NCBI RefSeq assembly: GCF_964213995.1
Contig: NC_135825.1
Coordinates: 12,648,001 to 12,712,000, forward strand
Source: Mustelus asterias
Lineage: Eukaryota
DNA: 64,000 bases
Direction of reading: 5' to 3'
In this document: positions 6,078 through 62,306 of the stretch, one piece after another
Layout of the letters: each line of letters begins with the position of its first letter
Numbering within the stretch: the first letter of the stretch is position 1
Made by a program: the position numbers and the translations under genes
Notes under the pieces: model-generated
Database searches by the model: none
Told to the model about the DNA's origin: nothing
What the model saw: only the letters and a program-made list of their open reading frames with translations

Positions 6078-6117
6078 ATGGGTTCTACCCTTCTCCTGTC
6101 CATTGCTTTCCTATCAG
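6078..6117 (+). CDS. Gene 1 exon 1, signal peptide (MGSTLLLSIAFLS)
   Basis: Good Kozak context aacaATGg, in-frame TAG upstream at 6063-6065, hydrophobic leader, donor TCAG|gtaaga in phase 1. Confidence 0.8.
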
Positions 6118-27100: not shown

Positions 27101-28974
27101 TAGTGGAAGATTCACCCTCCACCTGGCGAGAGTGTTCAGCTGTGCGATTCTTCCCCTTGTTTCTGGCCTCTACCTATTGCAGAAGCATCCAAGGCCCAAT
27201 CAGAATTTTGGGGCCCAGGTTTTTTGTTGGTTGGAGACCCACTTTGACGCTCAGATACATGACCCTGTAATCTAGGAGGCCAGACCAATTACTGATCAAA
27301 TTTTACACATCAGACTGTGAAAGTGGACTGCCAATAGTTTACTTCATAAAGTATAATCCCCTTACAGTGCAGAAGTAGGCCATTCAGCCCATTGAGCATG
27401 CCAAACCCTATCCCCATAACCCCACGTATTTACCCTGCTGATCCACCCCCTCCCCCCCCACCCCCCCCCCAACCTACACAGCTTGGGGCACTAAGGCGCA
27501 ACTTTAGCATGGCCAATGAACCTTATCCGCACATCTTTGGACTGTGGGAGGAAACCGGAGCACCCGGAGGAAACCCACGCAGACACGGGGAGAATGTGCA
27601 AACCCCACACACAGTCACCCAAGACCGGAATTGAAGACGGGTCCCTGGCACTGTGAGGCAGCAGTGCTAACCACTGTGCCACCATAAGTTCATAAGTTCA
27701 TAAGATATAGGATCAGGATTAGGCCATTCAGCCCATCGAGTCTGCTCCGCCATTCGATCATGGCTGATATGCTCCTCATCCCCATTTTCCTGCCTTCTCC
27801 CCATAACCTTTCAACCCATCACCAATTAAAAATCTGTCTAACTCCTCCATAAATTTTCTCACTGTCCCAGCATCCACCGCACTTTGGGGTAGCGAATTCC
27901 ACAGATTCACAACCCTTTGGGAGAAGTAGTTTCTCCTCAACTCTGTTTTAAATTTGCTACCCCTTATCCTAAGACTATGACCTCTCGTCCTAGACTGCCC
28001 CACCAGCAGAAGCATCCACTCCACGTCTACTTTATCCATACCTTTGATCATCTTGTAAACCTCAACTTGATCTCCCCTCATTCTTCTAAATTCCAGAGAG
28101 TATAGGCCTAAACTGTTCAATCTCTCTTCATACGACAAACCCCTCATCCATGCCGCCGTCACAGTGTTGCTAAAATATGGCTGAACTATTTTCCATAACC
28201 CAAGTTACCAATTAACTCAAGCAGTTGTATTTACTGAGGGGAATTCCCGACTGTCCATGCCGGCTGGATTCTCCAGTCCCGCTGGCAGCAATGGGATTTC
28301 CCCCGTGGGGGAAATCCCATTGACAGCAGCGGGACCAGAGAATCCCATCACTAGCGAACAGCACATCACCTTCCACCCCCAAGAAACACACGGATGGGAG
28401 GCCAGAGAATTCCCTCCAATACCAATTCACTGCCTATTTATTATAGTAAGTAGTCTCACAACACCAGGTTAAAGTCCAACAGGTTTATTTGGTAGCACGA
28501 GCGTTCGGAGCGCTGCCCCTTCATCAGGTGAGTGTCTGATAAAGGAGCAGCTCTCGTGCTACCAAATAAGCCTGTTGGACTTTAACCTGGTGTTGTGAGA
28601 CTACTTATTGTGCCCACCCCAGTCCAACGCCGGCATCTCCACATCGCATTTATTATAGAGCTTTGAAATATGTTTATTTTCCCAAGTAAAACATTACCTT
28701 AAGTTTCATTTTTGTAATTCAATGATGGATTGACTCATTGCTTCAATGCCTTCAGTCACACTCTCACATTCTTTATCTTCAGCTGTCCAAAGAGTTGGAA
28801 GAAGGAGTTACTTACGCCACTGTGACAATTCAGCCCAATAATCACCCTCAGGAGGACTCTGCTGCTTATGATAATGTGAAACCTTCCAATAGTCAGGAAG
28901 CAATCAAGCCGCCAGTTAACGAACCTCCTGCTTCGGAACCAACGGAATATTCCACAGTTGTGTTCAAAAAGTAA
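6078..28974 (+). CDS. Gene 1: complete six-exon CD300/CMRF35-like (pIgR-like family) single-Ig-V inhibitory receptor, 253 aa. Join 6078-6117,13716-14051,14504-14540,19581-19681,26822-26877,28783-28974
   Basis: All introns are GT-AG with phases 1,1,2,1,0. The exons sum to 762 nt, an open frame ending in TAA. Product: MGSTLLLSIAFLS-VTYASITGPSEK...CRF...KYWCRGFYRRSC...DKGWYWCGIERP...-APKPFAKDKERL-RLFLTLGLIFGILTVMLLGLVILVIRKIRKHKYN-DNGEKEATIENSVPKSNSV-LSKELEEGVTYATV...AYDNV...TEYSTVVFKK*. Confidence 0.85.
6168..6620 (+). mobile_element. CR1-like LINE 3' fragment
   Basis: LSYEERLDRLGLFSLE...TRGH motifs and attctatg tail. Confidence 0.85.
7253..7580 (+). mobile_element. HE1-type V-SINE, full length
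   Basis: Head, V core and tail present. Confidence 0.88.
8376..8650 (-). mobile_element. V-SINE, alternative-tail subfamily
   Basis: Same head and core, tail ...ttgtgacactaataaataaac. Confidence 0.8.
8822..9146 (-). mobile_element. HE1-type V-SINE
   Basis: Head and tail recognisable. Confidence 0.8.
9248..9360 (+). mobile_element. RTE-like LINE 3' end remnant
   Basis: Translates as CPTCGRVCRSHTGLISHQK, the C2H2-like C-terminus typical of RTE-clade ORF2. Confidence 0.5.
10150..12090 (+). mobile_element. Old CR1 fragment interrupted by a younger CR1 3' fragment (about 10510-11456)
   Basis: KFADDTK, LYKALVRPHLEYCEQFW and LGLYSLEFRR motifs. The degenerate older copy resumes at about 11457. 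Confidence 0.8.
12437..12752 (+). mobile_element. V-SINE, alternative-tail subfamily, full length
   Basis: Head, V core, then attctccctcagt...ggagtgtggcgactaggggattttcac...ttgtggcactaataaataa. Confidence 0.85.
13186..13480 (+). mobile_element. HE1-type V-SINE
   Basis: Head, core and tail. Confidence 0.85.
13716..14051 (+). CDS. Gene 1 exon 2, Ig V-type domain with four cysteines (CD300/pIgR type)
   Basis: Acceptor ttttcacacttacag|, donor CAAG|gtaggg, 336 nt, phase 1-1. Motifs C..KYWCRG.....C and D.GWYWCGI. Confidence 0.95.
14237..14369. mobile_element. Harbinger-like MITE (related copies at 24730-24936, 28261-28417, 32070-32197, 36076-36212, 46201-46329, 47838-47962, 49831-49998, 50001-50125, 60223-60351, 61635-61820)
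   Basis: Terminal inverted repeats GGGYGGRATTYTCC...GGARAATYCCRCCC around 120-200 bp bodies. Several share an internal ttgacct/aggtcaa motif. Superfamily inferred from the GGG/GGC termini. Confidence 0.55.
14504..14540 (+). CDS. Gene 1 exon 3, short stalk (APKPFAKDKERL)
   Basis: Acceptor tttttatacttcatttcgaatag|, donor TAAG|gtaaat. The 37-nt phase 1-2 exon bridges exon 2 to the TM exon exactly. Confidence 0.7.
15380..15990 (-). mobile_element. 3' fragment of a second CR1/L2-like LINE family (tail ...gggatgggcaataaatgctggcc)
   Basis: Same tail seen at 14640-14840, 19370-19450 and on the second tRNA-SINE family. Confidence 0.55.
16362..17030 (-). mobile_element. HE1-type V-SINE with an internal 52-bp tandem expansion
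   Basis: Head 16960-17030, tail 16362-16480, array between them. Confidence 0.85.
16487..16882. repeat. 52-bp tandem repeat, about 7.5 copies (catggccaatccacctaacctacacatcttgggacattaagggacaatttag)
   Basis: Unit starts at 16487, 16539, 16591, 16643, ~16694, ~16747, 16799, 16851. Confidence 0.9.
17925..18230 (-). mobile_element. HE1-type V-SINE
   Basis: Head, core and tail. Confidence 0.85.
18427..18725 (+). mobile_element. V-SINE, alternative-tail subfamily
   Basis: Same structure as 12437-12752. Confidence 0.85.
19581..19681 (+). CDS. Gene 1 exon 4, transmembrane helix and basic stop-transfer (LFLTLGLIFGILTVMLLGLVILVI-RKIRKHKYN)
   Basis: Acceptor cgcccag|, donor AACG|gtaagc, phase 2-1. 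Not in the ORF track in this frame. Confidence 0.85.
19810..20660 (-). mobile_element. CR1-like LINE 3' fragment split by a V-SINE (20252-20485)
   Basis: FWSPYLRKDVAALEAVRRRFTRLIPG on -, CR1 tail at 19810-19890. Confidence 0.8.
21670..21876. mobile_element. Palindromic copy of a third PLE-like family (duplicated at 22770-22976)
   Basis: attgctgagaaaagag...cacaagaa and ttcttgcaaatc...ctctttattcagcaata are imperfect inverted arms, each with a hammerhead-like core. Confidence 0.55.
21692..21727 (-). ncRNA. Hammerhead ribozyme-like motif (third PLE family; second copy 22792-22827)
   Basis: - strand cuguc CUGAUGA guacaagau GAAA aacu UC aacag. Confidence 0.4.
23519..23850 (+). mobile_element. HE1-type V-SINE, full length
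   Basis: Head, core and tail. Confidence 0.88.
24287..24630 (-). mobile_element. HE1-type V-SINE, full length
   Basis: Head, core and tail. Confidence 0.88.
25045..25465 (-). mobile_element. CR1-like LINE 3' fragment
   Basis: ORF 25128-25475 LGLFSLERRRLRGDLIEVYK...FFTQRVVGVWN and (ttctatg)n tail. Confidence 0.88.
26207..26503 (+). mobile_element. HE1-type V-SINE with an internal deletion
   Basis: Head and tail intact, part of the V core missing. Confidence 0.85.
26822..26877 (+). CDS. Gene 1 exon 5, membrane-proximal cytoplasmic segment (DNGEKEATIENSVPKSNSV)
   Basis: Long polypyrimidine tract ending ttttccag|, donor TGTG|gtaagg, 56 nt, phase 1-0. Confidence 0.75.
27355..27685 (-). mobile_element. 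HE1-type V-SINE
   Basis: Head, core and tail. Confidence 0.85.
27686..28150 (-). mobile_element. CR1-like LINE 3' fragment
   Basis: ORF 27776-28162 LSYEERLNSLGLYSLEFRR. Confidence 0.88.
28447..28647. mobile_element. Penelope-derived palindromic (inverted pseudo-LTR) insertion
   Basis: Arms are reverse complements, homologous to 51384-52062, 11-bp TSD ATTTATTATAG (28436-28446 / 28648-28658). Confidence 0.8.
28496..28530 (-). ncRNA. Minimal hammerhead ribozyme motif, degenerate (GAAA>GAAC)
   Basis: - strand cac CUGAUGA a ggggc agc gcucc GAAC gc UC gug. Confidence 0.5.
28783..28974 (+). CDS. Gene 1 exon 6 (terminal), cytoplasmic tail with VTYATV (ITIM), AYDNV (YxN) and TEYSTV (ITSM)
   Basis: Acceptor ctttatcttcag|, phase 0, three spaced tyrosine motifs, TAA at 28972-28974. 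Confidence 0.9.
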   Translation: MSKELEEGVTYATVTIQPNNHPQEDSAAYDNVKPSNSQEAIKPPVNEPPASEPTEYSTVVFKK

Positions 28975-34958: not shown

Positions 34959-35104
34959 AAGTCCCCCTCAAGCTACACACCATTCTGACTCGGAATTATA
35001 TCAACATTCCTTCACTGTCACTTGGTCAACACTCTGAAATACCCTCCCTAACAGCACTGTGGGTGATACACCACATGAACTGCAGAAGTTCAAGAAAGTT
35101 CAAG

Positions 35105-35845: not shown

Positions 35846-36645
35846 AGTCTAAAGCAGCTTCTCAGGGTCCTTAGTTATGGGCAGTGAATAAGACAAGCGA
35901 TACCAGCGACACTCACATGTCAGAAACAAATTTTAAAAATCATCAATCAAATTATGTAAATTGCATTCGTAAGACAAAGACTGTTATTTCAGAACTTGTG
36001 GTGCTGGTTCCAACTCTTGTCAGCAAGAGCACAGATCCGAAACTCAGGCGCAGACTCAGAAAATTGGTGCCTGTTGGCTGGAATTCTCTGGCGGTTCACA
36101 CCCTGCTATTGCTGCCAGCGAGAATGGAGAATGTGGCACTCAGCCAAACCTTCATTCAGAGCAGCAGGACTGGAGAATCCCAGCCCGCTGGCGAGGTCGG
36201 AGAATCCTGACCATTGTATTTTTCACGTGATATGGCAAGTCTTCTGCCATTGCAGAGCAGGAGCTTGATTTCGTCTGAATACAGAGATCTTTCGGGAGGC
36301 TACAGGATAAATACTTAACCCTCTGTCCCTCCCTTGCCTTGCTGCCTATCTGCTTCAGATCCTCTGATGTGAGAGAGTATCGAGGTGTAAGGCCCACCTC
36401 CTGCATCTTTTGGTATCTGTGTTGTCATGGCATCATCCGGACTGCTGATCAGTGCTATTGGATGATACGATTTCTAGATACACACACAGTGCAGATCAAA
36501 CTGCAATCTGATGGTAGTTGAGCTAGCTAGGGACAAGGTGCTGAGGAAGTAATTCTTAGTTGGTTTCTCTGGTTACAACTATCGGGAATCCCAGCTCACC
36601 CTCAGGAAAAAGCTGTTTGAGCAATTCACGAAATGGGTGGAGATT

Positions 36646-37040
36646 AGGGTGGCACGGTGGCACAGTGGTTAGCACTGCTGCCTCACAGCGCCAAGGACCC
36701 GGGTTCAATTCCGGCCTCGGGTCACTGTCTGTGTGGAGTTTGCACGTTCTCCCCGTGTCTGCGTGGGTTTCCTCCGGGTGCTCCGGTTTCCTCACACACT
36801 CCAAAGATGTGCGGGTTACGTGATTGGCCATGTTAAATTGCCCCTTAGATTTCCAAGATGTGTCGGTTAGGGGGATTAGTTATGATTTAAAGTGTTGGGT
36901 CACAGAGATACTAAATTGTCCCTTAGTGTCAGGGAGATTAGCAAGGTAAATACGAGGGTTTGTGGGGATGGGGCCTGGGTGGGATAGTGCGGGCTCAATG
37001 GGCCAAATGACCTCCTTCTGCACTGTAGGGATTCTATGAT
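36646..37040 (+). mobile_element. HE1-type V-SINE with an internal duplication
   Basis: Head, core, repeated ccaagatgtg/aaattgtccctta segment, tail. Confidence 0.85.
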
Positions 37041-39669: not shown

Positions 39670-40018
39670 TCATAGAAATCATAGAAACCCTACAGTCCAG
39701 AAAGAGGCCATTCGGCCCATCGAGTCTGCACCGACCACAAACCCACCCAGGCCCTACCCCCATATCCCTACATGTTTACCCACTAATCCCTCTAACCTAT
39801 GCATCTCAGGACACTAAGTGCAATTTTTAGCATGGCCAATCAACCTAACCCGCACATCTTTGGACTGTGGGAGGAAACTGGAGCACCCGGAGGAAACCCA
39901 CGCAGACACGAGGAGAATGTGCAAACTCCACACAGACAGTGACCCAAGCCGGGAATCGAATCCAGGTCCCTGAAGATGTGAAGCAGCAGTGCTAACCACT
40001 GTGCTACCGTGCCGCCCC
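39670..40018 (-). mobile_element. HE1-type V-SINE, young subfamily (near-identical to 54679-55030)
   Basis: Shares diagnostic cctctaacct...catctcaggacactaa...caatttttagcatgg. Confidence 0.9.
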
Positions 40019-40316
40019 AATGTGAACCAATGTGAACAGATAGCCTCCTTCCGTGCCATAACAATTCTGAGATTGGCAAACTTAAATTTAAATCGCTTGG
40101 CCTTCATAGAATCATAGAATCCTACAGTGCAGGAGCAGGCCATTTGGCCCATTGAGTCTGCACCGACCACAATCCCACCCAGGCCCTATCCCCATAACCC
40201 CATGCGTTTACCATGCTAATCCCCTTAACACTAAGGGACAATTTAGCATGGCCAATCCACCTAACCCGCACATCTTTGGTAATGATCACATTATGGTGAT
40301 TAAAGCAGATGGGTAG

Positions 40317-41280: not shown

Positions 41281-41342
41281 ATAAAATCAGGCTGTGCAAA
41301 GTGGCATTCTGTCCATAATATTGGCTGGATATTTTTCTAAAC

Positions 41343-41391
41343 ATGAGAAACATTGAATTTACCATCATCCTCATCACTCTGTCATTATCAG
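41343..41391 (+). CDS. Gene 2 exon 1, signal peptide (MRNIEFTIILITLSLS)
   Basis: aaacATGa start, hydrophobic leader, donor TCAG|gtaagg in phase 1, the same junction pattern as gene 1 exon 1. Confidence 0.8.
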
Positions 41392-44300
41392 GTAAGGAAG
41401 CAAATGGAATGAGCACAAGTTGGAGATAAGTCATTTTGTTAACTTTCTCTCCAGGTGCTTTCATCCCTTCATATTTAACAGACTGATCAGCGTTCTATGT
41501 GACGGAAGCTGCAATATGGATGTGTCCATAAAGCTTGGTGCCGTTTGATTTTCACAATGGAATGTATTATTAAATTCTGTAGATTTAAATTTTCAATGTG
41601 TTAACGTGGAAGTATCAGCAATATTAGAATATTAACGATTGAGAAGTTATGAGAGTCCAAAGCCTGTTAATTTAATTTAACAAAAGCACCAATACAATTT
41701 TATGAATGCGTTCAGTATGTGTTTGCTTTAAGTCAAAGATTCATTTCCAGAATATTTTCATGTCAGCGTCATTTGTCACTTAATTTTTCGGTGAAAAATC
41801 CATGTGACAATGTTGTTCTGAGTTCACTAAGTAAGCTACAGTTAAATTAAATATATTTTCATGTCACTTTTTAACATTCTCTGCTTTCCAAAATTCCATT
41901 TTCAGTCTCATTATGTAGAGTTTTTGTCCTCCACCGTTGATGACCCAAATTTCCAAGGTATTTGAACGCTGCTGGAGCAGGTAGTGGCACCGTGGTATTG
42001 TCACTGGACTAGCAATCCAGAGACCCAGGGTAATGTTCTGGGGACCCAGGTTCAAATCCCACAGGAGCAGATGGTGGCATTTGAATTCAATAAGAATTTG
42101 GATTTAAAAGTCAAATGATGACCATTGTCGATTGTTGGAAAAACCCATCTGGTTCACTATTGCCCTTTAGGGAAGGATATCTGCCATCCTTACCCAGTCT
42201 GACCTACATGTGACTCCAGATCCACAGCAATGTGGTTGACTTATAAATGTCTCCTCGAGGGTGCATAATAGATGGTGGCCCTGCCAGTGATGCCCACATC
42301 CCATGAACACATAAAAATAAAGGTAAGGGTGGAATTTGGGATAGGGCCTTGTTGCTCCAAATTGTGCTCCATAAGAATAATGTTGATGTTGCTTGTAGAG
42401 TCACAGAGATACACAGCACAGAAGCAGGCCCTTCGGCCCAACTCATCCATGCCAACCAGGTTTCCTAAACTGAACTAGTCCCATTTGTCTGCGTTTGGCC
42501 CATATCCCTCTAAACCTTTCCTGCACATGTACCTGTCCAAAGATCTTTTAAATGTTGTAATTGTACCTGCCTCTACGACCTCCTCTGGCAGCTCATTCTA
42601 TATACGTACCACCCTCTGTGTGAAAAGGTTGCCCCTCAGGTCCCTTTTAAATCTTTCCCCTCTGACCTTAACCTATGACCTCTAGTTTTGGACTCCCTTA
42701 CCCTGGGGAAATGACCTTGGCTATTCACCTGATCTATACCCCTCATGATTTTATAAACCTCTATAAGGTCACCCCTCATCCTCCTACACTCCAGGGAAAA
42801 AAGTTCCAGCCTATCCAACCTCTCTGAATAATTCAAACATTCCTGTCCCAGCCTTGTAAATCCTTTTTGTACCCTTTCCAATTTAATAACATCCTTCCTA
42901 CAGCAGATCGACCAGAATTCTACGCAGTATTCCAAATGTGGCCTTACCAATGTCTTGTGCAGTTGTAACATAACGTCCCAACGCCTGTATTCAATGCTCT
43001 GACCGATGAACCCAAGTATGCCAAACATCTTTTTCACCACCCTGTCTACCTGTGACCTCACTTTCAAGGCACTATTTACCTGCACCCCTAGGTCTCTCTG
43101 TTCGACAACACTCCCCAGGGTCTTACCATTAACTATGTAAGTCCTGCCCTCGTTTGTCTTACCAAAATGCAACACCTCGCATTTATCTGAATTAAACCCT
43201 ATCTGCCATACCTCGGCCCATTGACCCAGTTGATCAAGATCCCATTATAGTCATAGATAACCTTCTTCACTGTCCACTACACCACCAATTTTGGTGTCAT
43301 CTGCAAACTTACTTACCATACCTCCTATATTCTCATAAAAATCGTTGATATAAATGACAAAGAACAGTGGACCTAGCCCGATCCCTGTGGCACACCGCTG
43401 GTCATAAGCCTCCAGTCTGAAAAACAACTATTTACCACCACCCTCTGTCTCCTACCGGCAAGATGTGGAGATGCTGACATTGGACTGGGGTAAGCACAAT
43501 AAGAAGTCTCACAACACCAGGTCAAAGTCCAGCAGGTCCACCTGGCAGCACTAGCCCTCGGAGCCTCAAGCTCCTTCCTCAGGTGAGTCAGGGAACCCTA
43601 CCGGCAAGCCAATTTTGTACCCAATTGGCTAGTTCACCCTGGATCCCATATGATCTAACCTTCATGACCAGTCTACCATGCCATACCTTGTTGAAGGCCT
43701 TGCTAAAGTCTATAGAAACAACGTCTACCGCACTGCCTCATCTTTTTTCTTGGTCACCCCTTCAAAGAACTCTATCAAATTTGTAAGACGCGATTTCCCG
43801 CACACAAAGCCGTGTTCACTATCCCTAATCAGTCCTTGCCTTTCCAAATGCAGGTAAATCCTGCCTCTCAGAATCCCCTCCAACAACTTACCCACCACTG
43901 AAAATAGTCTCACCGGCCTGCAGTTCCATGGCTTTTCCCTGCAGCCTTTCTTAAGTAACGGCACAACATTTGCCTCCCTTCAGTCTTCCGGCACTTCATC
44001 CGTGATTGTCAATGATACAAATATCTCTGCCAGGGGGCCCCACAACTTCTTCCCTAGCTTCCCACAATGTCCTGGGATACACCAGATCAGGTGCCAGGGT
44101 TTTACCTACCTTTATGCATTTTAAGACCTCCAGCACCTCCTCTTCTATAATGTGGACACTTTTCAAGACATAACTACTTACTTCCCTGAGTTCCCTAGCT
44201 TGCATGGCTCTCTCCACGGTAAATACTGATGAAAAATATTCATTTAGAATCTCACCCAGCTCCTGTGGCTTCACACATAGATGACTTTGTTGATCTGGCA

Positions 44301-50300: not shown

Positions 50301-53300
50301 CTTTGGGGAATTTCCATAATGCTGATTTGGGGATGGGATTGGCCAGCAACATCGACTCAATTGCTCGCAACAGGTCAAGTTATGATCTCTGGAATGAAGA
50401 GTTGGTCGTATGAGGAACAGTTGAGGACTCTGGGTCCGTACTCATTGAACTTTAGAAGGATGAGAGGGGACTTACAGGAAACTTACAGGATACTGCGAGG
50501 CCTGGATAGAGTGGATGTGGAGAGGATGTTTCCACTAGTGGGAAAAACTAGAACCAGAGGGCACAACCTCAGGCTAAAGGGATGATCCTTCAAAACAGAG
50601 ATGAGGAGGAATTTCTTCAGCCAGAGAGTGGTGGATCTGTCGAACTCTTTGCCGCAGAAGGCTTTGGAAGCCAGGTCATTGAGTGTATTTAAGACCGAGA
50701 TAGATAGGTTCTTGATTAATAAGAGGATTGGGGGTTATGGGGAAAAGGCAGGAAAATGGGGATGAGAAAAATATCAGCCATGATTGAATGACGAAGCAGA
50801 CTCGATGGACCGAGTGGCCTAATTCTGCTCCTATGTCTTATGGTGTTATGATTATACATGGTCAGTGGAATTACCCATTCAGCCGATTTGTTTCCTCCTT
50901 AGCCTTCGAGGCTTCCTTCAAGCTCGTAGTCCTGACATAACCCATTGTTTTCCACTCTAACAGGTTCACACGGAGTATTGGGACCAGTGGAGGTGAATGG
51001 AAAATTAGGAGGGTCCATTACCGTCAACTGTAAATACAACATTCCGGTGAACAGGAATTCAGAGAAGTATTGGTGTCGGGGAGGCCGAAGATTTTCATGC
51101 ACAGTGTTAGCAGGCACACAGAGAAGACAGCAGGAAAGATACAACATTGTGGACAACCAAACCAGTGGAATATTTTCGGTGACAATGAGGCAATTGTCAC
51201 TGGAGGATATTGGATGGTATTGGTGTGGGATAGCAAGGCTGGGAAACGATGAAATGGCTTCTGTCAAATTGAATGTTCTGGAAGGTAAGCCCAATAATTA
51301 ATCAGAATCGATTGACTTCGAATACAATGGTAGCATTTCAATAAATGGACTGCTTCCCGTCCTGGCTGTTCTATAGAATAGAAGTGGAGATGCCGGCGTT
51401 GGGGTAAACACAGTAAGAAGTCTCACAACACCAGGTTAAAGTTCAACAGGTTTATTTGGTAGCAAAAGCCACTAGCTTTCAGAGCGCTGCCCCGTTGTCA
51501 GGTAAGCGGGATTCTGTTTACAAACAGGGCATATAAAGACACAAACTCAATTTACAAAATAATGGTTGGAATGCGAGTCTTTACAGGTAATCAAGTCTTA
51601 AAGGTACAGACAATGTGAGTGGAGAGAGCATTAAGCACAGGTTAAAGAGATGTGTATTGTCTCCAGACCGGACGGTTAGTGAGATTTTGCAAGCCCAGGC
51701 AAGTCGTGGGGGTTACAGATAGTGTGACATGAACCCAAGATCCCGGTTGAGGCCGTCCTCATGTGTGCGGAACTTGGCTATCAGTTTCTGCTCAGCGACT
51801 CTGCGTTGTCATGTGTCATGAAGGCCGCTTTTCTTTTTAGAACGCTCTCTCCACTCTCATTGTCTGTACCTTTAAGACTTGAGTACCTGTAAAGACTCGC
51901 ATTCCGACCATTATTGTGTAAATTGAGTTTGTGTCATTATATGCCCTGTTTGTGAACAGAACTCCCACTTACCTGACAAAGGGGCAGCGCTCCGAAAGCT
52001 AGTGGCTTTTGCTACCAAATAAACCTGTTGGACTTTAACCTCGTGTTGTGAGACTTCTTACAATAGAATAGAATCTATAGAATCCCTCCAGTGCAGAAGA
52101 AGGTCATTCGGCCCATCAAGTCTGTACCGACCACAATCCTACCCAGGCCCCATTCCCGTAAACCACGCATTTACCCTCTAATCCCCCTGACACTAAGGGG
52201 CAATTTAGCATAGCCAATCCACTTTCCAGACTCGAAACAAAGAACAAAGAAAATTACAGCACAGGAACAGGCCCTTCGGCCCTCCAAGTCTGCACCGACC
52301 ATGCTGCCCGACTGAACTAAAACCCCCTACCCTTCCGGGGACCGTATCCCTCTATTCCCATCCTATTCATGTACTTGTCCAGGCGCCCCTTAAAACTCAC
52401 TATCGTATCTGCTTCCACTACCTCCCCCAGCAACGGGTTCCAGGCACCCACCACCCTTTGGGTAAAAAACTTCCACGTACATCTCCTTTAAACCTTGCCC
52501 CTCGTACATTAAACCTGTGCCCCCCAGTAATTGACTCTTCCACCTTGGGAAAAAGCTTCTGACTGTCCACTCTGTCCATGCCCCTCATAATCTTGCAGAC
52601 TTCTATGAGGTTGCCCCTCAACCTCCGTCCTTCCAGTGAGAAACATTAACTCTATTTTCTCACTACACAGATGCTGCTGGATCTGTCGCATTTCTCCAGC
52701 ATTTTCTGTTTTTGTTTCAGATTCCATCATTCGCAGTGTTTTGCTTATAGTTTCGTTCTTTCAGGTGCAAAGGGCTGAACGAACATCTATAAATTGCCTT
52801 GACTCTTGTGATATTTGTCACTCTGTTTTACCAGCATGTACTTCCATGGCCTTCAGCAATGATGTATTGTCCTTTATTCTTGCAGCTAGCTTACCCAACC
52901 TCAGACATGTGCACGGGACTTTAGGAGAAGCTGTCACGTTAAAGTGTCAGTATCAAGTACCATATTACCGACACCATGAGAAGTACTTGTGCAAGGGGTC
53001 AGAGAGGAAGTCATGCATTGTGATTGCCAGAACTCAAAAGCAGAATGCAAACAGCGATGGAAGGATAATTACTATGGATAACCGGACCAGTGGAGTGTTT
53101 GCTGTCACCTTGACGGAACTATCCATGGAGGATGCGGGGCTTTACTGGTGTGGAATAACAATCATCGGTTACGACAATATGGTTCCCTTGCAACTGAATA
53201 TTTTTGAACGTAAGACAAATGTTTACTTCTTCCTAATAAGCAGTTCCCATATACTGAAACAAAATGTTAAATGTTCTGCTATGAGGGACTGTTGCAACAC

Positions 53301-56300: not shown

Positions 56301-59300
56301 CCATCAATCTCTACTTTAAACATGCACACTGACTGAGCTTCCACAGCCCTCTGGGACAGAGAATTCCAAAAATTCACTACACCCCGTGCAAAGAAATTTC
56401 TCCTCATCTCCTTATCTAAGTGGCATTGCTCCTTATTTTCAACTTGTGCCACCTTGGTCCCAGAATTCCCAACCAAGGGAAACATCTCACTAGCATCTAC
56501 CCTATCTGTTCCTTTAAGTATTTTGCATCTTTCAATGAGATCACCTCTCATTCTTTGAAAGTCTAGAGAATACATGCCTAGGCTGCCCAATCTCTCTTCA
56601 TAAGACCGTCCCACCATCCTGGGAACAAGTCTGGTGAACCTTCATTGCACTACCTCTATGGCAATAATACCCTTTCTGAGGTATGTGGACCAAAACTGCC
56701 CACAATGCTCCAGTGCAGTCTAACCAAGCTTCTATACAATTGAAACAACTCCTGTACTCTAATCCCCTTGCGACAAAGGCAAACACTCCATTAGCCTTTC
56801 TAGTAGCTTGCTGCGAGGGAGATGATGGTATAGTGGTGTTGTCGCTGGACTAGTAATCCAGAGACCCAGAGTAATTCTCTGGGGAACTGGGTACGAATCC
56901 CACCACAGCAGATGGTGGAATTTGAATTCAATAAAAGAAATCTGGAATTAAAAGTCTAATGATGATCATGAAACCATTGTTGATTGCTGGAAAAACCCAT
57001 CTGGTTTACTAATGACTTTTAGGGAAGAAAACCTTCATGCTAGCCTTCAGTGACTTATAGACAAGAAGGGTGTCATGTTGAAATTCAGGTTATTGCACTG
57101 ATTGGCTAGATTGACTGCAAAGGACTGTGTAGTAGAAACAATACTCTTTTCAGCTGCTTGCAATGTGGCAGTAAACAGAAACAGACACATATCACAGCCA
57201 GCAATAACTGGTGCAAAAAAAACTTCCCGGACCTGAGCTGTGGGTGAATAGTAAGGTGATTTGATAATGCTGCAACATTTAATCTTGCCAAAGTATGAAA
57301 ACATTGGAATCCAATAACAATGTGGGGTGGAAATTGATCGAATTTCAGATCAACCCACGTGATCGCTACAATAGTTCCGACACACCTTGCCGTTTGATCA
57401 GAAAATGATTTACACAATTACCAACAAACTCCAAAGATGTGCAGGTTAGGTTGATTGGTCATGCTTAATTGCCCCTTAGTGTCAGGGTAAATACGTGGAT
57501 GTAATAACTCCACAGAAGCAAAAGTCCCATCACTAAGTTACTTTATTTACATTATACATCTGTACACAGCCAGCTCTGAATGCAGGCTGGGAGTCTGACA
57601 CACCTGCTTTAAATAGGGAGCATGAGGCTCCCTGATTTAACCATCAATTAGGACTCATCAGGTAGTTCATACTCCAGCAAGCCCACCTCAGTAGCCTGGC
57701 TGAAGTCATCACAGTGGGTTTAAGGGGCCTAGGTGGGATTGTTGTCGGTGTTGGCTCGATGGATTGAAGGGCCTCCTCCTGCACTGTAGGGATTCTATGA
57801 TTCAAACAAGATTGCCCCACTAGATTTCAGCTAATGGCGCATTGATGTCTTTGCTTTTTTTTATTCATTCGTGGGACATGGGCGTCGCTGGCTGGCCAGC
57901 ATTTATTGCCCATCCCGAGTTGCCCTTGGAGGGAAGCTGCGAGTCAACCACATTGCAGTGGGTCTGGGGTCACATGTAGGCCAGACCAGGTAAGGACGGC
58001 AGATTTCCTTCCCTGAAGGACATTAATGACCCAACAATCGCCAATGGCTTCATCAGTAGATTCTTAATTCCAGGTATTTTTTTATTGAATTCAAATTCCA
58101 CCATCCGCCGTGGCGGGATTCGAACCCGGGTCCCCAGAACATTAGCTGAGCTTCTGGGTTAATAGTCTAGTGATAATACCACTAGGCCATCGCCTCCCTT
58201 TATTTGGTAGGAGGAGTGGGGGGGGCGGGTGCAGAAGACCAAACCAGGGTCTTAAAAAAGTATTGAAGGCACTTGATAGCTTGCGGGAAAAGTCAGGCTA
58301 TCAAAAAAATGATCGGTATCCAACAAACTAATTCTCCTCATAGTGGTTCCTTGCAGTCAGGTCTGTAGAGGAAAAATGATCAATAGGGGAACAATCATCT
58401 TTGAAATGAAAAGCATGGCGTTCCTCGCAGGTTAGACTACATGCAACAGAATATTTTGGAAAATTTGCAGCTGAATACCTGACGCATCGCTGTTATTCTT
58501 ATTGCTTTTACAGCTCTCGCAACAACAACATTGCCCAAAGAACCTCAGAAAACAATCAGCTGGGAAAGTGAAAGGTAACTTTGTGACTCAATCTATTTAA
58601 TTAAATTAACATCCTTTCAAGGACTTCAGAACAGAGGCCCTGCTATTCTTGCGTGTTCTAACGTGAACGTAGCAGCCTATATCACTGCTCATTCAGGACT
58701 TGCCCCGAGCCACACGGATCGGAATGTAGCTGCCAGCCCAGTTGGTTGCTGGCTGTTTTTAGGCAGGAGTGAGGAGGGGTAGGGGAGAGGGGCATTGCTT
58801 GTTCTGTGTCTTCCTTGGCAAATGCCTCTAGGTCAGAATTCTGACACCGCGGAAGAATATTGGAAACTGGGTTCAGTCAGCAGTCACTTTGATTTGATTT
58901 GATTTGAATTGATTTATTATTGTCACATGTATTAACATACAGTGAAAAGTATTGTTTCTTGCACGCTATGCAGACAAAGCATACCGTTCATAGAGAAGGA
59001 AACGAGAGAGTGCAGAATGTAGTGTTACAGTCATAGCTAGGGTGTAGAGAAAGATCAACTTAATGCAAGGTAAGTCCATTCAAAAGTCTGACGGCAGCAG
59101 GGAAGAAGCTGTTCTTGAGTCGATTGGTACGTGACCTCATATTTTTGTATCTTTTTCCCGACAGAAGAAGGTTGAAGAGAGAATGTCCGGGGTGCATGGT
59201 GTCTTTAATTATGATGGCTGCTTTGCCGAGGCAGCGGGAAGTGTAGACAGAGTCAATGGGTGGGAGGCTGGTTTGGGTGATGGACTGAGTGTTTAAGAAT

Positions 59301-62300
59301 GTTTTCTCATTACCGTGACTCATGCTGCCAGATATTCTTTTATCGTTTTCCTTCCTGAAGTTGCTGACTCATTGCTGAGAAGTGAATTCCAATTGTGTCA
59401 TTGTTCACTCATGAGCCTTGACATCATTATCCATCTGTTTGATCCCAAATTCTGTCACAGCCAAACTGAAATCTGCCCTCACTTGATGTTTGTACTTGCA
59501 GAGATCCAATAAAGTGTCCCGGCTGGCAAGATATTTTTCCCATCTCCTGAACCCGAGAAAATGAAAGTTGGGGCAGGAGACTATGGTGTGACGGTATTGT
59601 CATTGGGCTAGTAATCCAAAAACCCAGGCTAGTGCTCAGGGGGCATGGGTTCGAATCCCACCAGGGCAGCTGGTGCCATTTCAATTCAATTAATAAAAAA
59701 GTTGAGATTTGAGAGCTAGCTTCCATGATGGTGACTATGAAAGTATCAGAAAAACCTATCCTGTTCACCAATGTCCTTCAGGGAAGGAAATCTGCCATCC
59801 TTACCCGGTCTGGCCTACATGTGACTCCAGATCCTCAACAATGTGCTTGACTCTTGACCGCCCTCTGAAATGGCCTGGTAAGCCACTCAGCTCAAGGGCA
59901 ATTAGGGATGGACAACAAATGCTGGCCTTCTAATTGATGGCCACATCCCATGAAGGAATAACTAAACAAATAATTATTCTGCCATTTCAACAAAGATTAT
60001 ATATCTCAGCACATGCCCAGAATCTCCCTGAGCTATGTTGCAGAATCTCCCTGAGCCATGTTGCTTAACCCACCTGCCTGATGAACAATAGAGGAGGACA
60101 GGAATTATTTTCCATTGCTGACCGCTTCTGGTCAGTTGGCTCTGAAGTAAAGAAAATTAGATGTTAAAGCTACTGCTTCTGTTGATCTTTGAACGATCGG
60201 ACTAATTCAATGTGGCAGGTACAGATCAGAATTCTTCCACCCCACCCGCCACTGAAATTGTAATGGACGGGTTGCGGACAATGTGAAGGCCCGCTGGCAG
60301 TCGAGTGGGAATTTCCGGCTCTTAGACCAGCACGGTCGGAGAATTCCGCCCACGGTCTTTAATACAATGAGCAGAATAACACTAGGATGACAGAGGGATA
60401 ACAGAGATTTTATAATTCTATAATTTGGCTTGGATATGACGCTTTAACGCTCCAAGTTTGTTCAGTGATTTGGTGTCTAGAATTGCATAATGTAAATTGG
60501 TAGAACACCCATCTGGTATTTACTGTGAAATGTTCTGTGGTTTTCCGATGACTGTTCCTTTTGCTGACTTCCGCTAAATCAAGGTTAAAACAGAAATATT
60601 TTCAGAGCATTGTATGGAAAGGGACACAATTTTGCAGATGTGGGTTTTCCTTTGCATTTCTCAGTTATTCCAAAAGCTCAGAAGGGAACCTGACGTTACA
60701 GAGAGTTGGGGCTGAATGTCGGAGGTTGGTGCTAGGCAGGTATTTTCACGCGGTGGCCATACAATAAGGAACAGAAGCCCGCCCCCAAGAGTTGCTAGAC
60801 CAATCGGAGGCTCAGCAGCATCAGCAACATGTTCTGAGGCAGTCACTACATGAAGAGCCTCGATACCCAGGCACCCTCAAAGAGGGACAGGTGGCATTGA
60901 ACAAAGCCAGGGCCTGGCGGGGGTTGGGGGGGGTGTAGTGGACATGGAGAACCACAAAACCAGCAGGAATATAAACATAACACGGTGGCACAGTGGCTAG
61001 CACTGCTGTCTCACAACACCAGGGACTCAGGTTCAATTCCGGCTGCCGGAAGTTAGCTTAATATTGCTTTTTAGTTATTGGTTCAGGAGCCAAATCTATT
61101 TCAATGTCTCTTTCCACGATCAATCCAAATCACAAATTCTTGCAACTGCACCAATCGCCCTCTAACTATGGGTCAATCACTCATGAAGGTTCATTCACAC
61201 TATTTAAAATTAACCAGCTGATCTCTATCCAGGAACTTGCTTGTGGATATTAATTGAGGAAGCGATTAGAGTTATCTGTGATTCTTTTTTGTTGATGGTC
61301 ACTATCAAGGGTGAGTGGATCAGGAATATTGGCCAGGGACCAACTATATGGTCTCAGTCAGAAATCCGGGCAGATATTTTTAAATTCATTCATGGGATGT
61401 GGGCGTCGCTGGCTGGGCCAGCATTTGTTGGCCATCCCTAATTGCCCTTGAACTGAGTGGCTTGATAGGCCGCTTCAGAAGGGCATTTAAGAGTCAACCA
61501 CATTGCTGTGGTTCTGCAGTCACATGTGGGCCAGGCCAGATAAGATGACCGATTTTTTTCCCGAAAGGACACTGAAGAAAACCAGATGGGTTTTTTCAAC
61601 AATCGACAATAGTCAGCAATAGACTTATGCACTGGGGCGGGGAGGGAGGGCGGGGCGGGGGGGGGGGGGGGGGGGGGGGGGTGAGCGGGGGGGCGGTGGG
61701 GGGGGAGTCGGGGGGGGCGTGAGTTGGGGGGGGTGGTGGTTGGCAGCAGAACATGAAAAGGTCCGTTGACCTCAGGCAGGATTTTCTAGTTTCGGGGCGA
61801 GCGCAGCCAGAACACCCCGTCCATAATTTCAGATGTTTATGGAGTTCAAATTTCACCATTTGCCATGGTGGGATTCAAAAGCAGGTCCCCAGTGTCAATA
61901 CCACTGCACCACCACCACCTCCCCATGAATCATAGGGTCCCTGCCAACAGTAGAACCTTCCGGTTCTGCCTAAGGCAATGGACGTTTCAGCGGCTTGGAC
62001 ATCTTGCTGTCTTGCCTCTGCTGCAACAAGGCTGTAAGATCCTACCCCCTGTTCCTGTGGAGTTGCACCCTGCAAATATCAGTACTTTCAGCTGTATAAA
62101 AGGGGGAAAGAAATTGGGAAATTGAAGAAGAGTCACCGGAGAATGAAAATTACTTTCAATTTAGAGAAATTAACTTCCTTCTCTTTGTCTTCACAGCACC
62201 TCAAATGTTTTCATCGCACTGGTGGTCCCTGTGCTCGGAGCATTATTTGTAGTGATCCTTATTACTAGTATTCTTGTTGCAAGATGCAGAAAGAAATCTG

Positions 62301-62306
62301 CGGCTG
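41343..62306 (+). CDS. Gene 2: two-Ig-V pIgR-like/CD300-like type I receptor, 3'-partial. Join 41343-41391,50964-51284,52886-53209,58514-58574,62197-62306. Cytoplasmic exons probably lie beyond the window
   Basis: GT-AG introns with phases 1,1,1,2,1 and an open frame of 288 codons: leader, D1, D2, Thr/Ser-rich stalk, uncharged TM followed by RCRKK. Confidence 0.85.
41980..42320 (+). mobile_element. Second tRNA-derived SINE family (other copies at 4480-4720, 54295-54470, 55290-55715, 56820-57030, 57855-58200, 59580-59960, 61375-61920)
   Basis: tRNA-like head gtggtattgtcactggactag...ggttcaaatcccac, body gaattcaat...aaaacccatctggttcact...agggaaggaa, tail gatgcccacatcccatgaa. Confidence 0.7.
43463..43596 (-). 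mobile_element. Short Penelope pseudo-LTR copy inserted in CR1, with clustered T>C (sense A>G) changes
   Basis: 12-bp TSD CCTACCGGCAAG (43451-43462 / 43597-43608), homologous to the 28447 and 51384 copies. Confidence 0.8.
44535..45232 (-). mobile_element. Rex1/Babar-like LINE 3' fragment inserted in a V-SINE
   Basis: Homologous to 3050-3736, (GATTT)n tail, SINE resumes at about 45235. Confidence 0.85.
45836..46176 (-). mobile_element. HE1-type V-SINE
   Basis: Head, core and tail. Confidence 0.85.
46860..47657 (-). mobile_element. CR1-like LINE 3' fragment
   Basis: ORF 46897-47526 with CR1 ORF2 C-terminal motifs. Confidence 0.88.
48630..49000 (-). mobile_element. CR1-like LINE 3' fragment
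   Basis: ORF 48714-49007 and (tcttatgg)n tail. Confidence 0.85.
49065..49371 (+). mobile_element. Solo LTR (family LTR-A), 307 bp
   Basis: TGTGG...CATCA termini, 5-bp TSD CAGGA (49060-49064 / 49372-49376), TATAAA and AATAAA, homologous to 40317-40647. Confidence 0.85.
50385..50850 (+). mobile_element. CR1-like LINE 3' fragment ending about 110 bp before the D1 exon
   Basis: Homologous to 35380-35845. Confidence 0.85.
50964..51284 (+). CDS. Gene 2 exon 2, Ig V domain D1
   Basis: Acceptor ttttccactctaacag|, donor GAAG|gtaagc, 321 nt. GPVEVNGKLGGSITVNCKYNIPVNRNSEKYWCRGGRRFSC...EDIGWYWCGI. Confidence 0.95.
51384..52062 (-). mobile_element. Penelope-like element 3' fragment with an inverted pseudo-LTR (fold-back structure)
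   Basis: - strand encodes QRRVAEQKLIAKFRTHEDGLNRDLGFMSHYL*, the C-terminus of a GIY-YIG endonuclease. 51845-52061 is an inverted copy of 51413-51630. Flanking duplication ATAGAATAGAA. Confidence 0.85.
51970..52004 (+). ncRNA. Minimal hammerhead ribozyme motif, degenerate (CUGACAA)
   Basis: uac CUGACAA a ggggc agc gcucc GAAA gc UA gug, with G8 of the core mutated. Confidence 0.4.
52235..52642 (-). mobile_element. CR1-like LINE 3' fragment
   Basis: RGNLIEVCKIMRGMDRVD on -, (ttctttg)n tail. Confidence 0.8.
52886..53209 (+). CDS. Gene 2 exon 3, Ig V domain D2
   Basis: Acceptor cctttattcttgcag|, donor GAAC|gtaaga, 324 nt. CQY...EKYLCKGSERKSC...EDAGLYWCGI. Confidence 0.93.
53350..53727 (+). mobile_element. 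CR1-like LINE 3' fragment
   Basis: DVIEVYKIVKGIDRV...FFTQRVVGAWNALP and ttctttg tail. Confidence 0.82.
53978..54294 (-). mobile_element. HE1-type V-SINE
   Basis: Head, partial core and tail. Confidence 0.82.
54679..55030 (-). mobile_element. HE1-type V-SINE, young subfamily
   Basis: Full length, near-identical to 39670-40018. Confidence 0.9.
56160..56815 (-). mobile_element. Older CR1-like LINE 3' fragment
   Basis: ORFs 56225-56617 and 56598-56786 carry degenerate CR1 motifs. Confidence 0.75.
57500..57713 (-). mobile_element. Short solo LTR (family LTR-B) inserted in a V-SINE
   Basis: TGTAATAACT...AGTCATCACA imperfect inverted termini, near-TSD GTGGA/GTGGG, SINE sequence resumes on both sides. 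Confidence 0.65.
58514..58574 (+). CDS. Gene 2 exon 4, stalk (PLATTTLPKEPQKTISWESE)
   Basis: Acceptor ttcttattgcttttacag|, donor AAAG|gtaact, 61 nt, phase 1-2, Thr/Ser/Pro-rich. Confidence 0.75.
58888..59290 (-). mobile_element. Rex1/Babar-like LINE 3' fragment
   Basis: TSLPPIDSVYTSRC...RLKNSFFP and (GATTT)n tail. Confidence 0.85.
62197..62306 (+). CDS. Gene 2 exon 5, transmembrane (STSNVFIALVVPVLGALFVVILITSILVARCRKKSAA)
   Basis: Strong acceptor ttccttctctttgtcttcacag|, donor GCTG|gtaagt, 110 nt, phase 2-1. Confidence 0.88.

What the first reader, a model, noticed from the sequence alone, without database searches (positions are those of the whole stretch)
50964..51284. Shark two-domain receptor whose D1 carries a pIgR / Fc-alpha-mu-R-like CDR1 loop: candidate polymeric-Ig receptor
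Seen: D1 of gene 2 reads VLGPVEVNGKLGGSITVNCKYNIPVNRNSEKYWCRGGRRFSC (VNR at 51047-51055). Established: the N-terminal domain of human pIgR reads about IFGPEEVNSVEGNSVSITCYYPPTSVNRHTRKYWCRQGARGGC. Its VNRHxRKYWC CDR1 loop, shared with Fc-alpha/mu receptor, is the main contact for polymeric IgA/IgM. Typical CD300 domains lack VNR here, and so does gene 1 in this window (TSYHDYQKYWC). Sharks have J chain and pentameric IgM, and to my knowledge a convincing pIgR orthologue has not been established in cartilaginous fish. The C-terminal half of the same domain (DNQ...F.VTM..L...D...YWCGI...GND) looks CD300f-like. Inference: this may be an ancestral-type mosaic of the CD300/pIgR/FcamR family and a candidate IgM-binding or transport receptor. 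Caveat: the loop is one residue shorter and H-T-R is replaced by N-S-E.
Basis: partly seen in the sequence, partly recalled or inferred. Interest (0 to 1): 0.85.

Follow-up and report, generated by a model that had tools for sequence, protein, structure and literature searches.

The report
Shark CD300-like receptor, not pIgR
This exon encodes the outer domain of a conserved shark immune receptor that shares a small Asn-Arg loop motif with the antibody transporter pIgR, but by descent it belongs to the CD300-like receptor family.

Summary
Window 50964-51284 is a phase-1 exon that encodes the quoted V-set domain, with VNR at 51047-51055. The window is Mustelus asterias. NCBI's automatic name for its model of this locus is 'polymeric immunoglobulin receptor-like', and that model fuses two genes.

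Gene 2 has its own leader, then D1, D2, a stalk and an uncharged TM segment. It has one D1-type copy in each of nine shark species.

An Asn-Arg pair in pIgR register occurs in 20 of 350 family domains: 7 of 9 shark D1s and 13 tetrapod pIgR-type D1s, and none elsewhere. So the resemblance is specific, but small:
- Val is in 1 of 9 sharks, and a close relative's transcript reads Ser-Tyr-Arg.
- Only 2 of 6 named pIgR contact residues match. Arg34 is an invariant Glu.

D1 sits with D2 in a cartilaginous-fish-only clade (100/96). That clade lies inside a 63-domain CD300-like set with no pIgR domain (93/89). Forcing D1 with pIgR D1 is rejected (AU p 0.029). Forcing the whole clade with pIgR D1 is not (p 0.070).

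Verdict: a lineage-specific CD300/MDIR-like receptor, not a pIgR orthologue. IgM binding is untested. Synteny, tissue expression and FCAMR could not be examined. The scan holds 21 unchecked notes of CD300/pIgR-like genes elsewhere in this genome.

The parts
41344..41392 (+). Gene 2 leader exon, coding part: ATG plus signal peptide MRNIEFTIILITLSLS, phase-1 donor GT at 41393
   Evidence: Read directly. tblastn of the Heptranchias orthologue, residues 1-17, 82% identity. A homologous leader is present in 8 of 8 other shark models.
50964..51284 (+). Gene 2 D1 exon: V-set Ig domain with two disulfide pairs (the finding)
   Evidence: Exact match to residues 257-363 of XP_078098063.1. Spliced to D2 in a relative's transcript contig.
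51047..51055 (+). Codons Val-Asn-Arg of the CDR1-like loop
   Evidence: Across nine sharks: V 1 of 9, N 8 of 9, R 8 of 9, both N and R 7 of 9. The listed differences of organism B's transcript read Ser-Tyr-Arg here.
52886..53209 (+). Gene 2 D2 exon: second V-set Ig domain, phase 1 to phase 1
   Evidence: 45.5% identical to D1.
58514..58574 (+). Gene 2 stalk exon, Thr/Ser-rich (PLATTTLPKEPQKTISWESE)
   Evidence: acceptor AG 58512-13, donor GT 58575-76.
62197..62306 (+). Gene 2 transmembrane exon. The helix has no charged residue. RCRKK stop-transfer sequence. The cytoplasmic exons lie beyond the window end.
   Evidence: Residues 531-577 of the stored model were not found in the window.
6078..28974 (+). 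Neighbouring gene 1: a single-V CD300-like inhibitory-type receptor. Leader 6078-6116, Ig 13715-14050, stalk 14503-14538, TM 19579-19680, tail 26821-26877 and 28783-28971 with VTYATV and TEYSTV, then its own stop.
   Evidence: Exact peptide mapping of XP_078098063.1 residues 1-253. ORF ending VVFKK*. Exon ends were not checked base by base.

Best explanation
The exon encodes the membrane-distal V-type Ig domain (D1) of a type I membrane receptor of the starry smooth-hound. Its order is signal peptide, D1, D2, a short Thr/Ser stalk, an uncharged transmembrane helix, and a cytoplasmic tail of about 70 residues encoded beyond the window.

The gene has one D1-type copy in each of nine shark species. 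It lies in a tandem cluster of CD300/CMRF35-like receptor genes, the kind described in skate as MDIR.

D1 and D2 are each other's nearest relatives, so the two-domain ectodomain arose by duplication inside the cartilaginous-fish CD300-like lineage. It is not an orthologue of pIgR or FCAMR. I read the Asn-Arg pair in CDR1 as convergence, or at most a small retained ancestral trait.

How it works (inferred, not shown): D1's CDR loops bind a conserved ligand at the cell surface. The tail has no ITIM or ITAM but has three conserved tyrosine motifs, one of them NPxY in 5 of 9 species. This suggests internalisation or sorting rather than classical inhibitory or activating signalling. The ligand is unknown. 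A CD300-type ligand such as a membrane lipid is more likely than polymeric IgM.
For: Locus identity: stored protein XP_078098063.1 (Mustelus asterias, 'polymeric immunoglobulin receptor-like') maps exactly to the window exons.

Orthologues: the D1-type domain scores 152-173 bits in three shark representatives, and the next best domain scores 106. The word search found 9 shark proteins among 55 candidates and nothing else.

Similarity:
- PDB phmmer: mouse CD300lf 76.8 bits, human CD300f 65.0, human pIgR D1 alone 58.7, FCMR 25.7.
- BLASTP: own D2 45.5% identity, CLM domains 38-43%, pIgR D1 29-37%.
- Foldseek: CD300lf TMq 0.70-0.73, pIgR 0.60-0.68.

Trees:
- FastTree of 559 domains gives a cartilaginous-fish-only clade of 27 tips, support 0.983.
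- IQ-TREE of 92 domains gives that clade as 25 rows at 100/96. It lies inside a 63-row set with no pIgR domain, at 93/89.
- AU test of shark D1 plus pIgR D1 held together: lnL 25.45 lower, p 0.029.

Clade signature: Glu before KYWC/KYLC in 22 of 27 clade domains, against 23 of the 323 other domains that have the register.

Contact residues: by the alignment, of Asn30, Arg31, His32, Arg34, Thr48 and Tyr55 (named in PMC7707832, passages read) only Asn30 and Arg31 match. Arg34 is Glu in 9 of 9 sharks.

Cluster: gene 1 with ITIM-type motifs lies upstream. Fused models in other sharks show a further single-V gene downstream.

Tail motifs and the uncharged TM helix.

Expression: an 826-nt contig at depth 435 in run X4 (a close relative) joins 51282 to 52884, which is D1 spliced to D2.
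Against: - The Asn-Arg pair in exactly pIgR's register is otherwise confined to tetrapod pIgR-type D1 among the 350 registered domains. It is kept in 7 of 9 sharks, including the sevengill Heptranchias, so it is not noise.
- The AU test does not reject joining the whole cartilaginous-fish clade to pIgR D1 (lnL 14.14 lower, p 0.070).
- The link to tetrapod CLM is weak (26/47).
- The alignment has 110 columns, and FCAMR, FCMR, named teleost pIgR and a TREM outgroup are missing from the trees.
- Gene conversion between D1 and D2 could hide an older ancestry.
- A tail without ITIM or ITAM and a one-copy pattern across sharks also suit a pIgR-like endocytic role.
- No ligand, tissue or synteny data were obtained.
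- The D1 model is only moderate (pLDDT 73.4, and residues 49-64 are under 50).
Confidence: 0.75

Rival explanations
1. Ancestral-type relative of pIgR/FCAMR. D1 (or the D1/D2 clade) descends from the same ancestral domain as pIgR D1 and kept the Asn-Arg of CDR1. The C-terminal half was homogenised with D2 or drifted towards the CD300-like consensus.
For: xNR in register occurs only in shark D1 and the tetrapod pIgR-type D1 clade (20 of 350 domains). The N-terminal half is 44% identical to pIgR D1 against 38% to shark D2, while the C-terminal half is 27% against 49%. Joining the whole clade to pIgR D1 is not rejected (p 0.070). The ectodomain has two domains, like teleost pIgR (PMC4786434, passages read).
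Against: D1 plus pIgR D1 is rejected (p 0.029). The tree of the N-terminal half alone shows no pIgR affinity. A 93/89 branch separates all pIgR domains from the set that holds D1. The 44% versus 38-40% gap is about two residues in 37. His32, Arg34, Thr48 and Tyr55 are not matched. The locus holds CD300-like ITIM genes.
Confidence: 0.1
2. Functional analogue. Whatever its descent, the receptor binds polymeric IgM, with or without J chain, through D1 and carries or internalises it, so it does a pIgR-, FCMR- or CD300LG-like job in sharks.
For: One D1-type copy in each of nine sharks, with a conserved CDR1 core nr.sEKYWC. An uncharged TM helix and a tail without ITIM or ITAM; NPxY in 5 of 9, and two further conserved Tyr motifs. 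Transcribed at high contig depth in a relative. Sharks have J chain and polymeric IgM (PMC10801876 and PMC10663602, passages read).
Against: PMC10801876 (passage read, citing Flowers 2021, which I could not read) states that the elasmobranch J chain C-terminus is unique and that J chain serves only IgM polymerisation there. pIgR CDR1 docks on that C-terminus through Arg31 and His32 (PMC7707832). His32 and Arg34 are replaced. Stegostoma has Asn-Trp, Cetorhinus Lys-Arg, and the close relative Ser-Tyr-Arg. Mustelus itself lacks the NPxY tyrosine (NPVD). There are no binding or tissue data.
Confidence: 0.12
3. One gene, as in NCBI's model. Gene 1 and gene 2 would form a single 577-residue protein, so that 'D1' is the second of three Ig domains and not an N-terminal ligand-binding domain.
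For: Stored models join a gene-1-like part to the gene-2 part in Mustelus, S. canicula, Chiloscyllium, Heterodontus and Stegostoma, and in one S. torazame isoform.
Against: Gene 1 has its own TM helix, an ITIM-type tail and a stop codon at 28972-28974. Gene 2 has its own ATG and signal peptide at 41344-41392, and a homologous leader is present in 8 of 8 other shark models. Models in S. torazame, Heptranchias and Rhincodon start at that leader, and the Cetorhinus model starts a few residues before it. An ectodomain placed after a TM helix and a cytoplasmic tail makes no topological sense. The relative's contig carries only 117 nt upstream of D1.
Confidence: 0.05

Closest known systems
CD300 / CMRF35-like molecules (CLM), especially CD300f/CLM-1
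   Same: V-type Ig domain with two disulfide pairs and the KYWC[RK]G motif. Best sequence match (76.8 bits) and best fold match (TMq 0.70-0.73). On the same side of the domain tree (93/89). Lies in a tandem multigene cluster next to an ITIM-bearing member.
   Different: Two V domains instead of one. No ITIM, ITAM or charged TM residue. No one-to-one orthology with any mammalian CD300 (sister link 26/47). Carries Asn-Arg in CDR1, which no sampled CLM domain has.
Polymeric immunoglobulin receptor (pIgR), domain 1
   Same: Same superfamily and the same double-disulfide V fold. Asn-Arg at the same distance from KYWC as Asn30-Arg31, which contact J chain in mouse SIgA (PMC7707832). Multi-V ectodomain and a tail without ITIM or ITAM. 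NCBI's automatic name is 'pIgR-like'.
   Different: 29-37% identity. A separate clade. His32, Arg34, Thr48 and Tyr55 are not matched. The model shows no helical turn in CDR1 (moderate confidence). D2 is not of the D5 type. Linkage and function are untested.
Skate modular domain immune-type receptors (MDIR)
   Same: A cartilaginous-fish multigene family of activating and inhibitory receptors whose Ig domains resemble CD300, TREM/TLT and pIgR (description read in PMC3031540; the original 2006 paper is recalled, not read). Little-skate and stingray 'pIgR-like' proteins fall in the same clade as D1/D2.
   Different: No sequence named MDIR was fetched, so identity with that family is not shown. The D1-type domain was found only in sharks.
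Teleost pIgR (two-domain secretory component)
   Same: Two tandem V-type domains on a type I membrane protein. Binds polymeric Ig without J chain (PMC4786434 and PMC10663602, passages read).
   Different: Trout SC scores 103.6 bits summed over two domains, lower per domain than CD300lf. No named teleost pIgR was in my trees.

Membership tests
pIgR | N-terminal domain groups with pIgR D1 in a domain phylogeny | tested here: not met
   IQ-TREE of 92 domains: shark D1 lies in a cartilaginous-fish clade at 100/96, and pIgR D1 is separate. AU p 0.029 against D1 plus pIgR D1. The looser grouping of the whole clade with pIgR D1 has p 0.070 and is not rejected.
pIgR | D1 ligand-contact set: Asn30, Arg31, His32, Arg34, Thr48, Tyr55 | tested here: not met
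   2 of 6 match by the alignment (N and R). His32 is Asn, Arg34 is Glu (9 of 9 sharks), Thr48 is Val, Tyr55 is Arg. The residue list comes from PMC7707832 (passages read).
pIgR | Membrane-proximal domain of the D5 type | tested here: not met
   D2 clusters with D1 and the batoid domains. pIgR D5 forms its own clade.
pIgR | Linkage with FCMR, FCAMR and IL10-family genes | not testable with these tools
The window holds only CD300-like genes. Unchecked scan notes describe CD300/pIgR-like genes from about 636 kb before to about 223 kb beyond the window.
pIgR | Epithelial expression, transcytosis, cleavage to secretory component, binding of polymeric Ig | not testable with these tools
   The only evidence is a spliced transcript contig in a relative, tissue unknown.
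CD300 / CMRF35-like | V-type Ig with two disulfide bonds and the YWC[RK] motif (as defined in PMC3031540) | tested here: met
   C22, C37, C45, C87 and KYWCRG in D1. These cysteines are invariant in 9 of 9 sharks.
CD300 / CMRF35-like | Closest to CD300 domains by sequence, fold and tree | tested here: met
   A 63-row set that excludes all pIgR domains, at 93/89. The direct sister link to tetrapod CLM is only 26/47.
CD300 / CMRF35-like | Single Ig domain, with ITIM signalling or a charged TM residue | tested here: not met
   Two V domains, an uncharged TM helix, and no ITIM or ITAM in the orthologues' tails.
CD300 / CMRF35-like | Member of a tandem cluster of paired receptors | tested here: met
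   Gene 1 with VTYATV and TEYSTV lies upstream in the window. A further single-V ITIM-type gene follows gene 2 in the Heptranchias model.
Skate MDIR | Cartilaginous-fish multigene receptors built from a variable number of CD300/pIgR/TREM-like Ig domains | tested here: inconclusive
   The domain number varies (S. torazame has D2 twice). Skate and ray proteins are in the same clade. No sequence named MDIR was compared.

The most novel reading that the evidence does not exclude
Sharks do have a receptor for polymeric IgM, and it is this conserved two-V-domain gene. Its D1 uses an Asn-Arg CDR1 like pIgR's, either retained from the common ancestor of the CD300 and pIgR families or re-invented. On that reading, receptor-mediated uptake or transport of polymeric Ig predates bony fish.
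Probability: 0.1. Interest if true: 0.85.

Novelty: new member of a known kind. Interest (0 to 1): 0.35.

Why it matters
Whether cartilaginous fish, the oldest lineage with immunoglobulins and J chain, have a polymeric-Ig receptor is an open question. The papers I could read place the first pIgR in bony fish and assign shark J chain to polymerisation only.

This work shows that the gene automatically named 'pIgR-like' at this locus is not the missing orthologue. It is a CD300-like gene born within cartilaginous fish.

It also singles the gene out. It has one D1-type copy in each of nine sharks, no ITIM or ITAM, and a CDR1 Asn-Arg seen elsewhere only in the pIgR D1 clade. That makes it a reasonable candidate for a direct IgM-binding test.

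Tried and rejected
- FCAMR, FCMR and teleost pIgR as named references. The pIgR-D1 word search listed only mammalian pIgR (best 120 of 154). The last search used a region of the turtle protein that I had not checked against its domain map, and it returned only turtles and one bird.
The only context comes from the window itself, from fused models in other sharks, and from unchecked scan notes.
- Flowers et al. 2021 was not held, by DOI or by PMC id. I know its conclusion only through one sentence in PMC10801876.
- Tissue expression. No listed run is on record as RNA. One contig run of a relative proved to be spliced, but its tissue is unknown.
- Mosaic idea. The half-domain identities lean weakly towards it, but the tree of the N-terminal half gives no pIgR affinity. 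Rejected as evidence of descent.
- ESM Atlas. It returned V-set clusters with automatic names such as 'FCAMR-like' and 'pIgR-like' at 0.92-0.94. These are leads only and were not used.
- Pfam on the full models found nothing in gene 2's tail.
- The structure model has no helix in CDR1, but the model is of moderate quality, so I give this little weight.
- Literature. Six searches found no paper that claims a shark pIgR. The library lacks most subscription journals.
- Supplements I did not see may bear on two claims: Datasets S1/S2 of PMC10801876 on the shark J-chain C-terminus, and the Akula 2014 supplements on the screened shark sequences.
Full report
OBSERVATION

The stretch 50964-51284 is a complete phase-1 exon. 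The acceptor AG is at 50962-63 and the donor GT at 51285-86. Translated literally from 50964 it is full of stops. Pfam calls it a V-set domain (E 1.7e-15). A six-frame pattern scan finds three domains of this type in the window: gene 1 (13784-13990), D1, and D2 (52945-53151).

WHAT AND WHERE

A search of 1.84 billion representative proteins gave 2806 hits at E up to 0.001. The best 150 were listed. When these 150 were scored domain by domain, three shark proteins carry a D1-type domain at 152-173 bits, and the next best domain of any kind scores 106.

A word-index search with the catshark protein found 9 proteins among 55 candidates. All are sharks, and 7 of the 9 are named 'polymeric immunoglobulin receptor-like' by NCBI.

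One of them, XP_078098063.1 of Mustelus asterias, matches the window exon by exon without a mismatch. So the window is starry smooth-hound, and this locus already carries that automatic name.

The model fuses two genes:
- Residues 1-253 are gene 1: leader, one V domain, TM helix, and a tail with VTYATV and TEYSTV. Gene 1 has its own stop codon at 28972-28974.
- The rest is gene 2.

Gene 2 has its own ATG and signal peptide at 41344-41392 with a phase-1 donor, and a homologous leader is present in 8 of 8 other shark models. It continues with D1, D2 (52886-53209), a Thr/Ser stalk (58514-58574) and an uncharged TM exon (62197-62306). The tail exons lie beyond the window.

Contigs of three runs of organism A are identical to the window, including intron flanks, so these are DNA. 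Run X4 of a second organism holds an 826-nt contig at depth 435 that joins 51282 directly to 52884. It differs at 12 letters plus 2 gaps of 322 (D1) and 17 of 325 (D2). This is a spliced D1-D2 transcript of a close relative. Its tissue is unknown.

THE MOTIF

In the nine shark orthologues the loop reads:

| Species | CDR1 string |
|---|---|
| Mustelus | NIPVNRNSEKYWC |
| S. torazame | NRPRNRNSEKYWC |
| S. canicula | NIPSNRNSEKYWC |
| Cetorhinus | SVPSKRNYEKYWC |
| Heptranchias | SIPSNRDFEKYWC |
| Chiloscyllium | NIARNRDSEKYWC |
| Heterodontus | STPSNRNSEKYWC |
| Stegostoma | NIASNWNSEKYWC |
| Rhincodon | NIASNRDSEKYWC |

. Val is present in 1 of 9, Asn in 8 of 9, Arg in 8 of 9, and both Asn and Arg in 7 of 9. 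The Glu before KYWC is invariant. In the relative's transcript the listed differences (one base put in after 51046, G to T at 51049, 51050 left out) turn Val-Asn-Arg into Ser-Tyr-Arg. Tyr is the usual family residue at that place.

Among 559 domains cut from the stored proteins, 350 have the K.WC register. Of these, xNR in pIgR's register occurs in 20: 7 shark D1s and 13 tetrapod pIgR-type D1s (VNR in mammals, birds and a turtle; ANR in turtle pIgR-like proteins). It occurs in no other domain. So the resemblance is specific to two lineages. That makes it a single coincidence, but a real one.

In mouse SIgA, D1 Arg31 and His32 bond to the C-terminal Asp of J chain, and Asn30 contacts J-chain Arg106. 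Arg34, Thr48 and Tyr55 also contact the ligand (PMC7707832, passages read). By the alignment the shark domain matches only Asn30 and Arg31. His32 is Asn, Arg34 is Glu, Thr48 is Val and Tyr55 is Arg.

DESCENT

Against solved structures:

| Chain | Bits |
|---|---|
| Mouse CD300lf | 76.8 |
| Human CD300f | 65.0 |
| Human pIgR D1 alone | 58.7 |
| CD300a | 52.3 |
| FCMR | 25.7 |

. By BLASTP, D1 is 45.5% identical to its own D2, 49.5% to Heptranchias D2, 50.5% to a sturgeon domain, 38-43% to CLM domains and 29-37% to pIgR D1.

A FastTree of all 559 domains puts shark D1 (9), shark D2 (10), skate and stingray (6) and elephant-shark (2) domains in one clade with support 0.983. Tetrapod pIgR D1 forms its own clade elsewhere.

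A careful IQ-TREE of 92 chosen domains by 110 columns gives:

| Grouping | Rows | UFBoot / SH-aLRT |
|---|---|---|
| Shark D1 | 9 | 93/95 |
| Cartilaginous-fish clade | 25 | 100/96 |
| That clade plus tetrapod and amphibian CLM | 40 | 26/47 |
| Set of CLM, fish, shark gene 1 and gene 3 domains, with no pIgR domain | 63 | 93/89 |

.

Holding shark D1 with the seven pIgR-type D1 rows costs 25.45 log-likelihood units (AU p 0.029). Holding the whole 25-row clade with them costs 14.14 (p 0.070), which is not rejected.

In the N-terminal 37 residues, D1 is 44% identical to pIgR D1, against 38% to shark D2 and 40% to CLM. In the remaining 69 residues it is 27% against 49% and 38%. A tree of the N-terminal block alone is unresolved, and its nearest rows are shark and newt CD300-like domains.

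Glu before KYWC/KYLC marks 22 of 27 clade domains, against 23 of the 323 others that have the register.

The AlphaFold model is moderate (pLDDT 73.4, and residues 49-64 are under 50). It shows no helix in CDR1. Its best fold matches are CD300lf (TMq 0.70-0.73) ahead of pIgR (0.60-0.68).

Limits of the trees: few columns; rows chosen by me; no FCAMR, FCMR, named teleost pIgR or outgroup; and possible gene conversion between D1 and D2.

HOW IT LIKELY WORKS

Shown:
- A transcribed, spliced type I receptor with two V domains.
- One D1-type copy in each of nine sharks, from sevengill to houndshark.
- An uncharged TM helix.

From the orthologues' tails:
- No ITIM or ITAM.
- NPxY in 5 of 9. Mustelus has NPVD.
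- A DITYD-type tyrosine in 9 of 9.
- FPxYI in 8 of 9.

Inferred: ligand binding through the D1 loops, followed by internalisation or sorting rather than classical inhibitory or activating signalling. The ligand is unknown. By family, a lipid or other CD300-type ligand is the default. Polymeric IgM remains possible, at about one chance in ten.

COMPARISON AND NOVELTY

The gene works most like, and descends with, CD300/CMRF35-like receptors. It fits the description of skate MDIRs given in PMC3031540 (passages read), but no sequence named MDIR was compared. It fails the tested pIgR membership features: tree position, contact set and D5-type domain. Linkage and function were not testable.

Akula et al. 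found no PIGR homologues in sharks (PMC4016189, passages read), and Stadtmueller et al. place the first pIgR in teleosts (PMC4786434, passages read). My six searches found no paper that claims a shark pIgR.

The scan's own unchecked notes describe CD300/pIgR-like receptor genes from about 636 kb before to about 223 kb beyond this window. I confirmed only the part inside the window.

VERDICT

The gene is an already auto-annotated, lineage-specific CD300/MDIR-like receptor with a small but specific pIgR-like loop feature. Interest is moderate to low unless IgM binding is shown.

Noticed in passing
window 6078-62306: NCBI's model XP_078098063.1 joins two separate receptor genes. It skips gene 1's stop codon (28972-28974) and gene 2's own leader exon (41344-41392). 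Models in five other shark species make a similar join.
   Followed up: partly
window about 51140-51150 (D1 residues 59-61): Mustelus D1 lacks three residues (R-L-F in most species) that the other 8 of 9 sharks have between the C' and D strands. No insertion is listed there for the close relative's transcript. The AlphaFold model is least confident at this spot (residues 49-64 under 50).
   Followed up: partly
window 51046-51050: In the close relative's transcript, three of the listed differences in D1 fall within five bases of the CDR1 codons, although the exon is otherwise about 96% identical. This could mean local rapid change or a small conversion tract.
   Followed up: no
window 26821-28974: Gene 1's tail carries ITIM/ITSM-like motifs (VTYATV, TEYSTV). 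It gives a sub-threshold Pfam match to SIT, the SHP2-interacting adaptor (26.1 bits against a cut-off of 27.6).
   Followed up: partly
stored protein P0002 (Scyliorhinus torazame): This catshark orthologue has the D2 domain twice in tandem, and the two copies are nearly identical. So the domain number of this gene varies among sharks.
   Followed up: no
window 41323-41343: The last seven codons before gene 2's ATG are open in frame. The last three (F-L-N) match the residues that precede the leader Met in the S. canicula (FLLN) and Cetorhinus (LFLN) models. The 5' leader may be conserved or be part of read-through transcripts.
   Followed up: no
window, many places, e.g. 39840-40079, 44300-44545, 54851-55042, 36560-36823: A short interspersed repeat gives look-alike ORFs on both strands (…GGTVAQWLALL… / …HGGTVVSTAAS…). 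It occurs in the introns of both genes, along with LINE reverse-transcriptase fragments (690-3571, 34943-35761).
   Followed up: no
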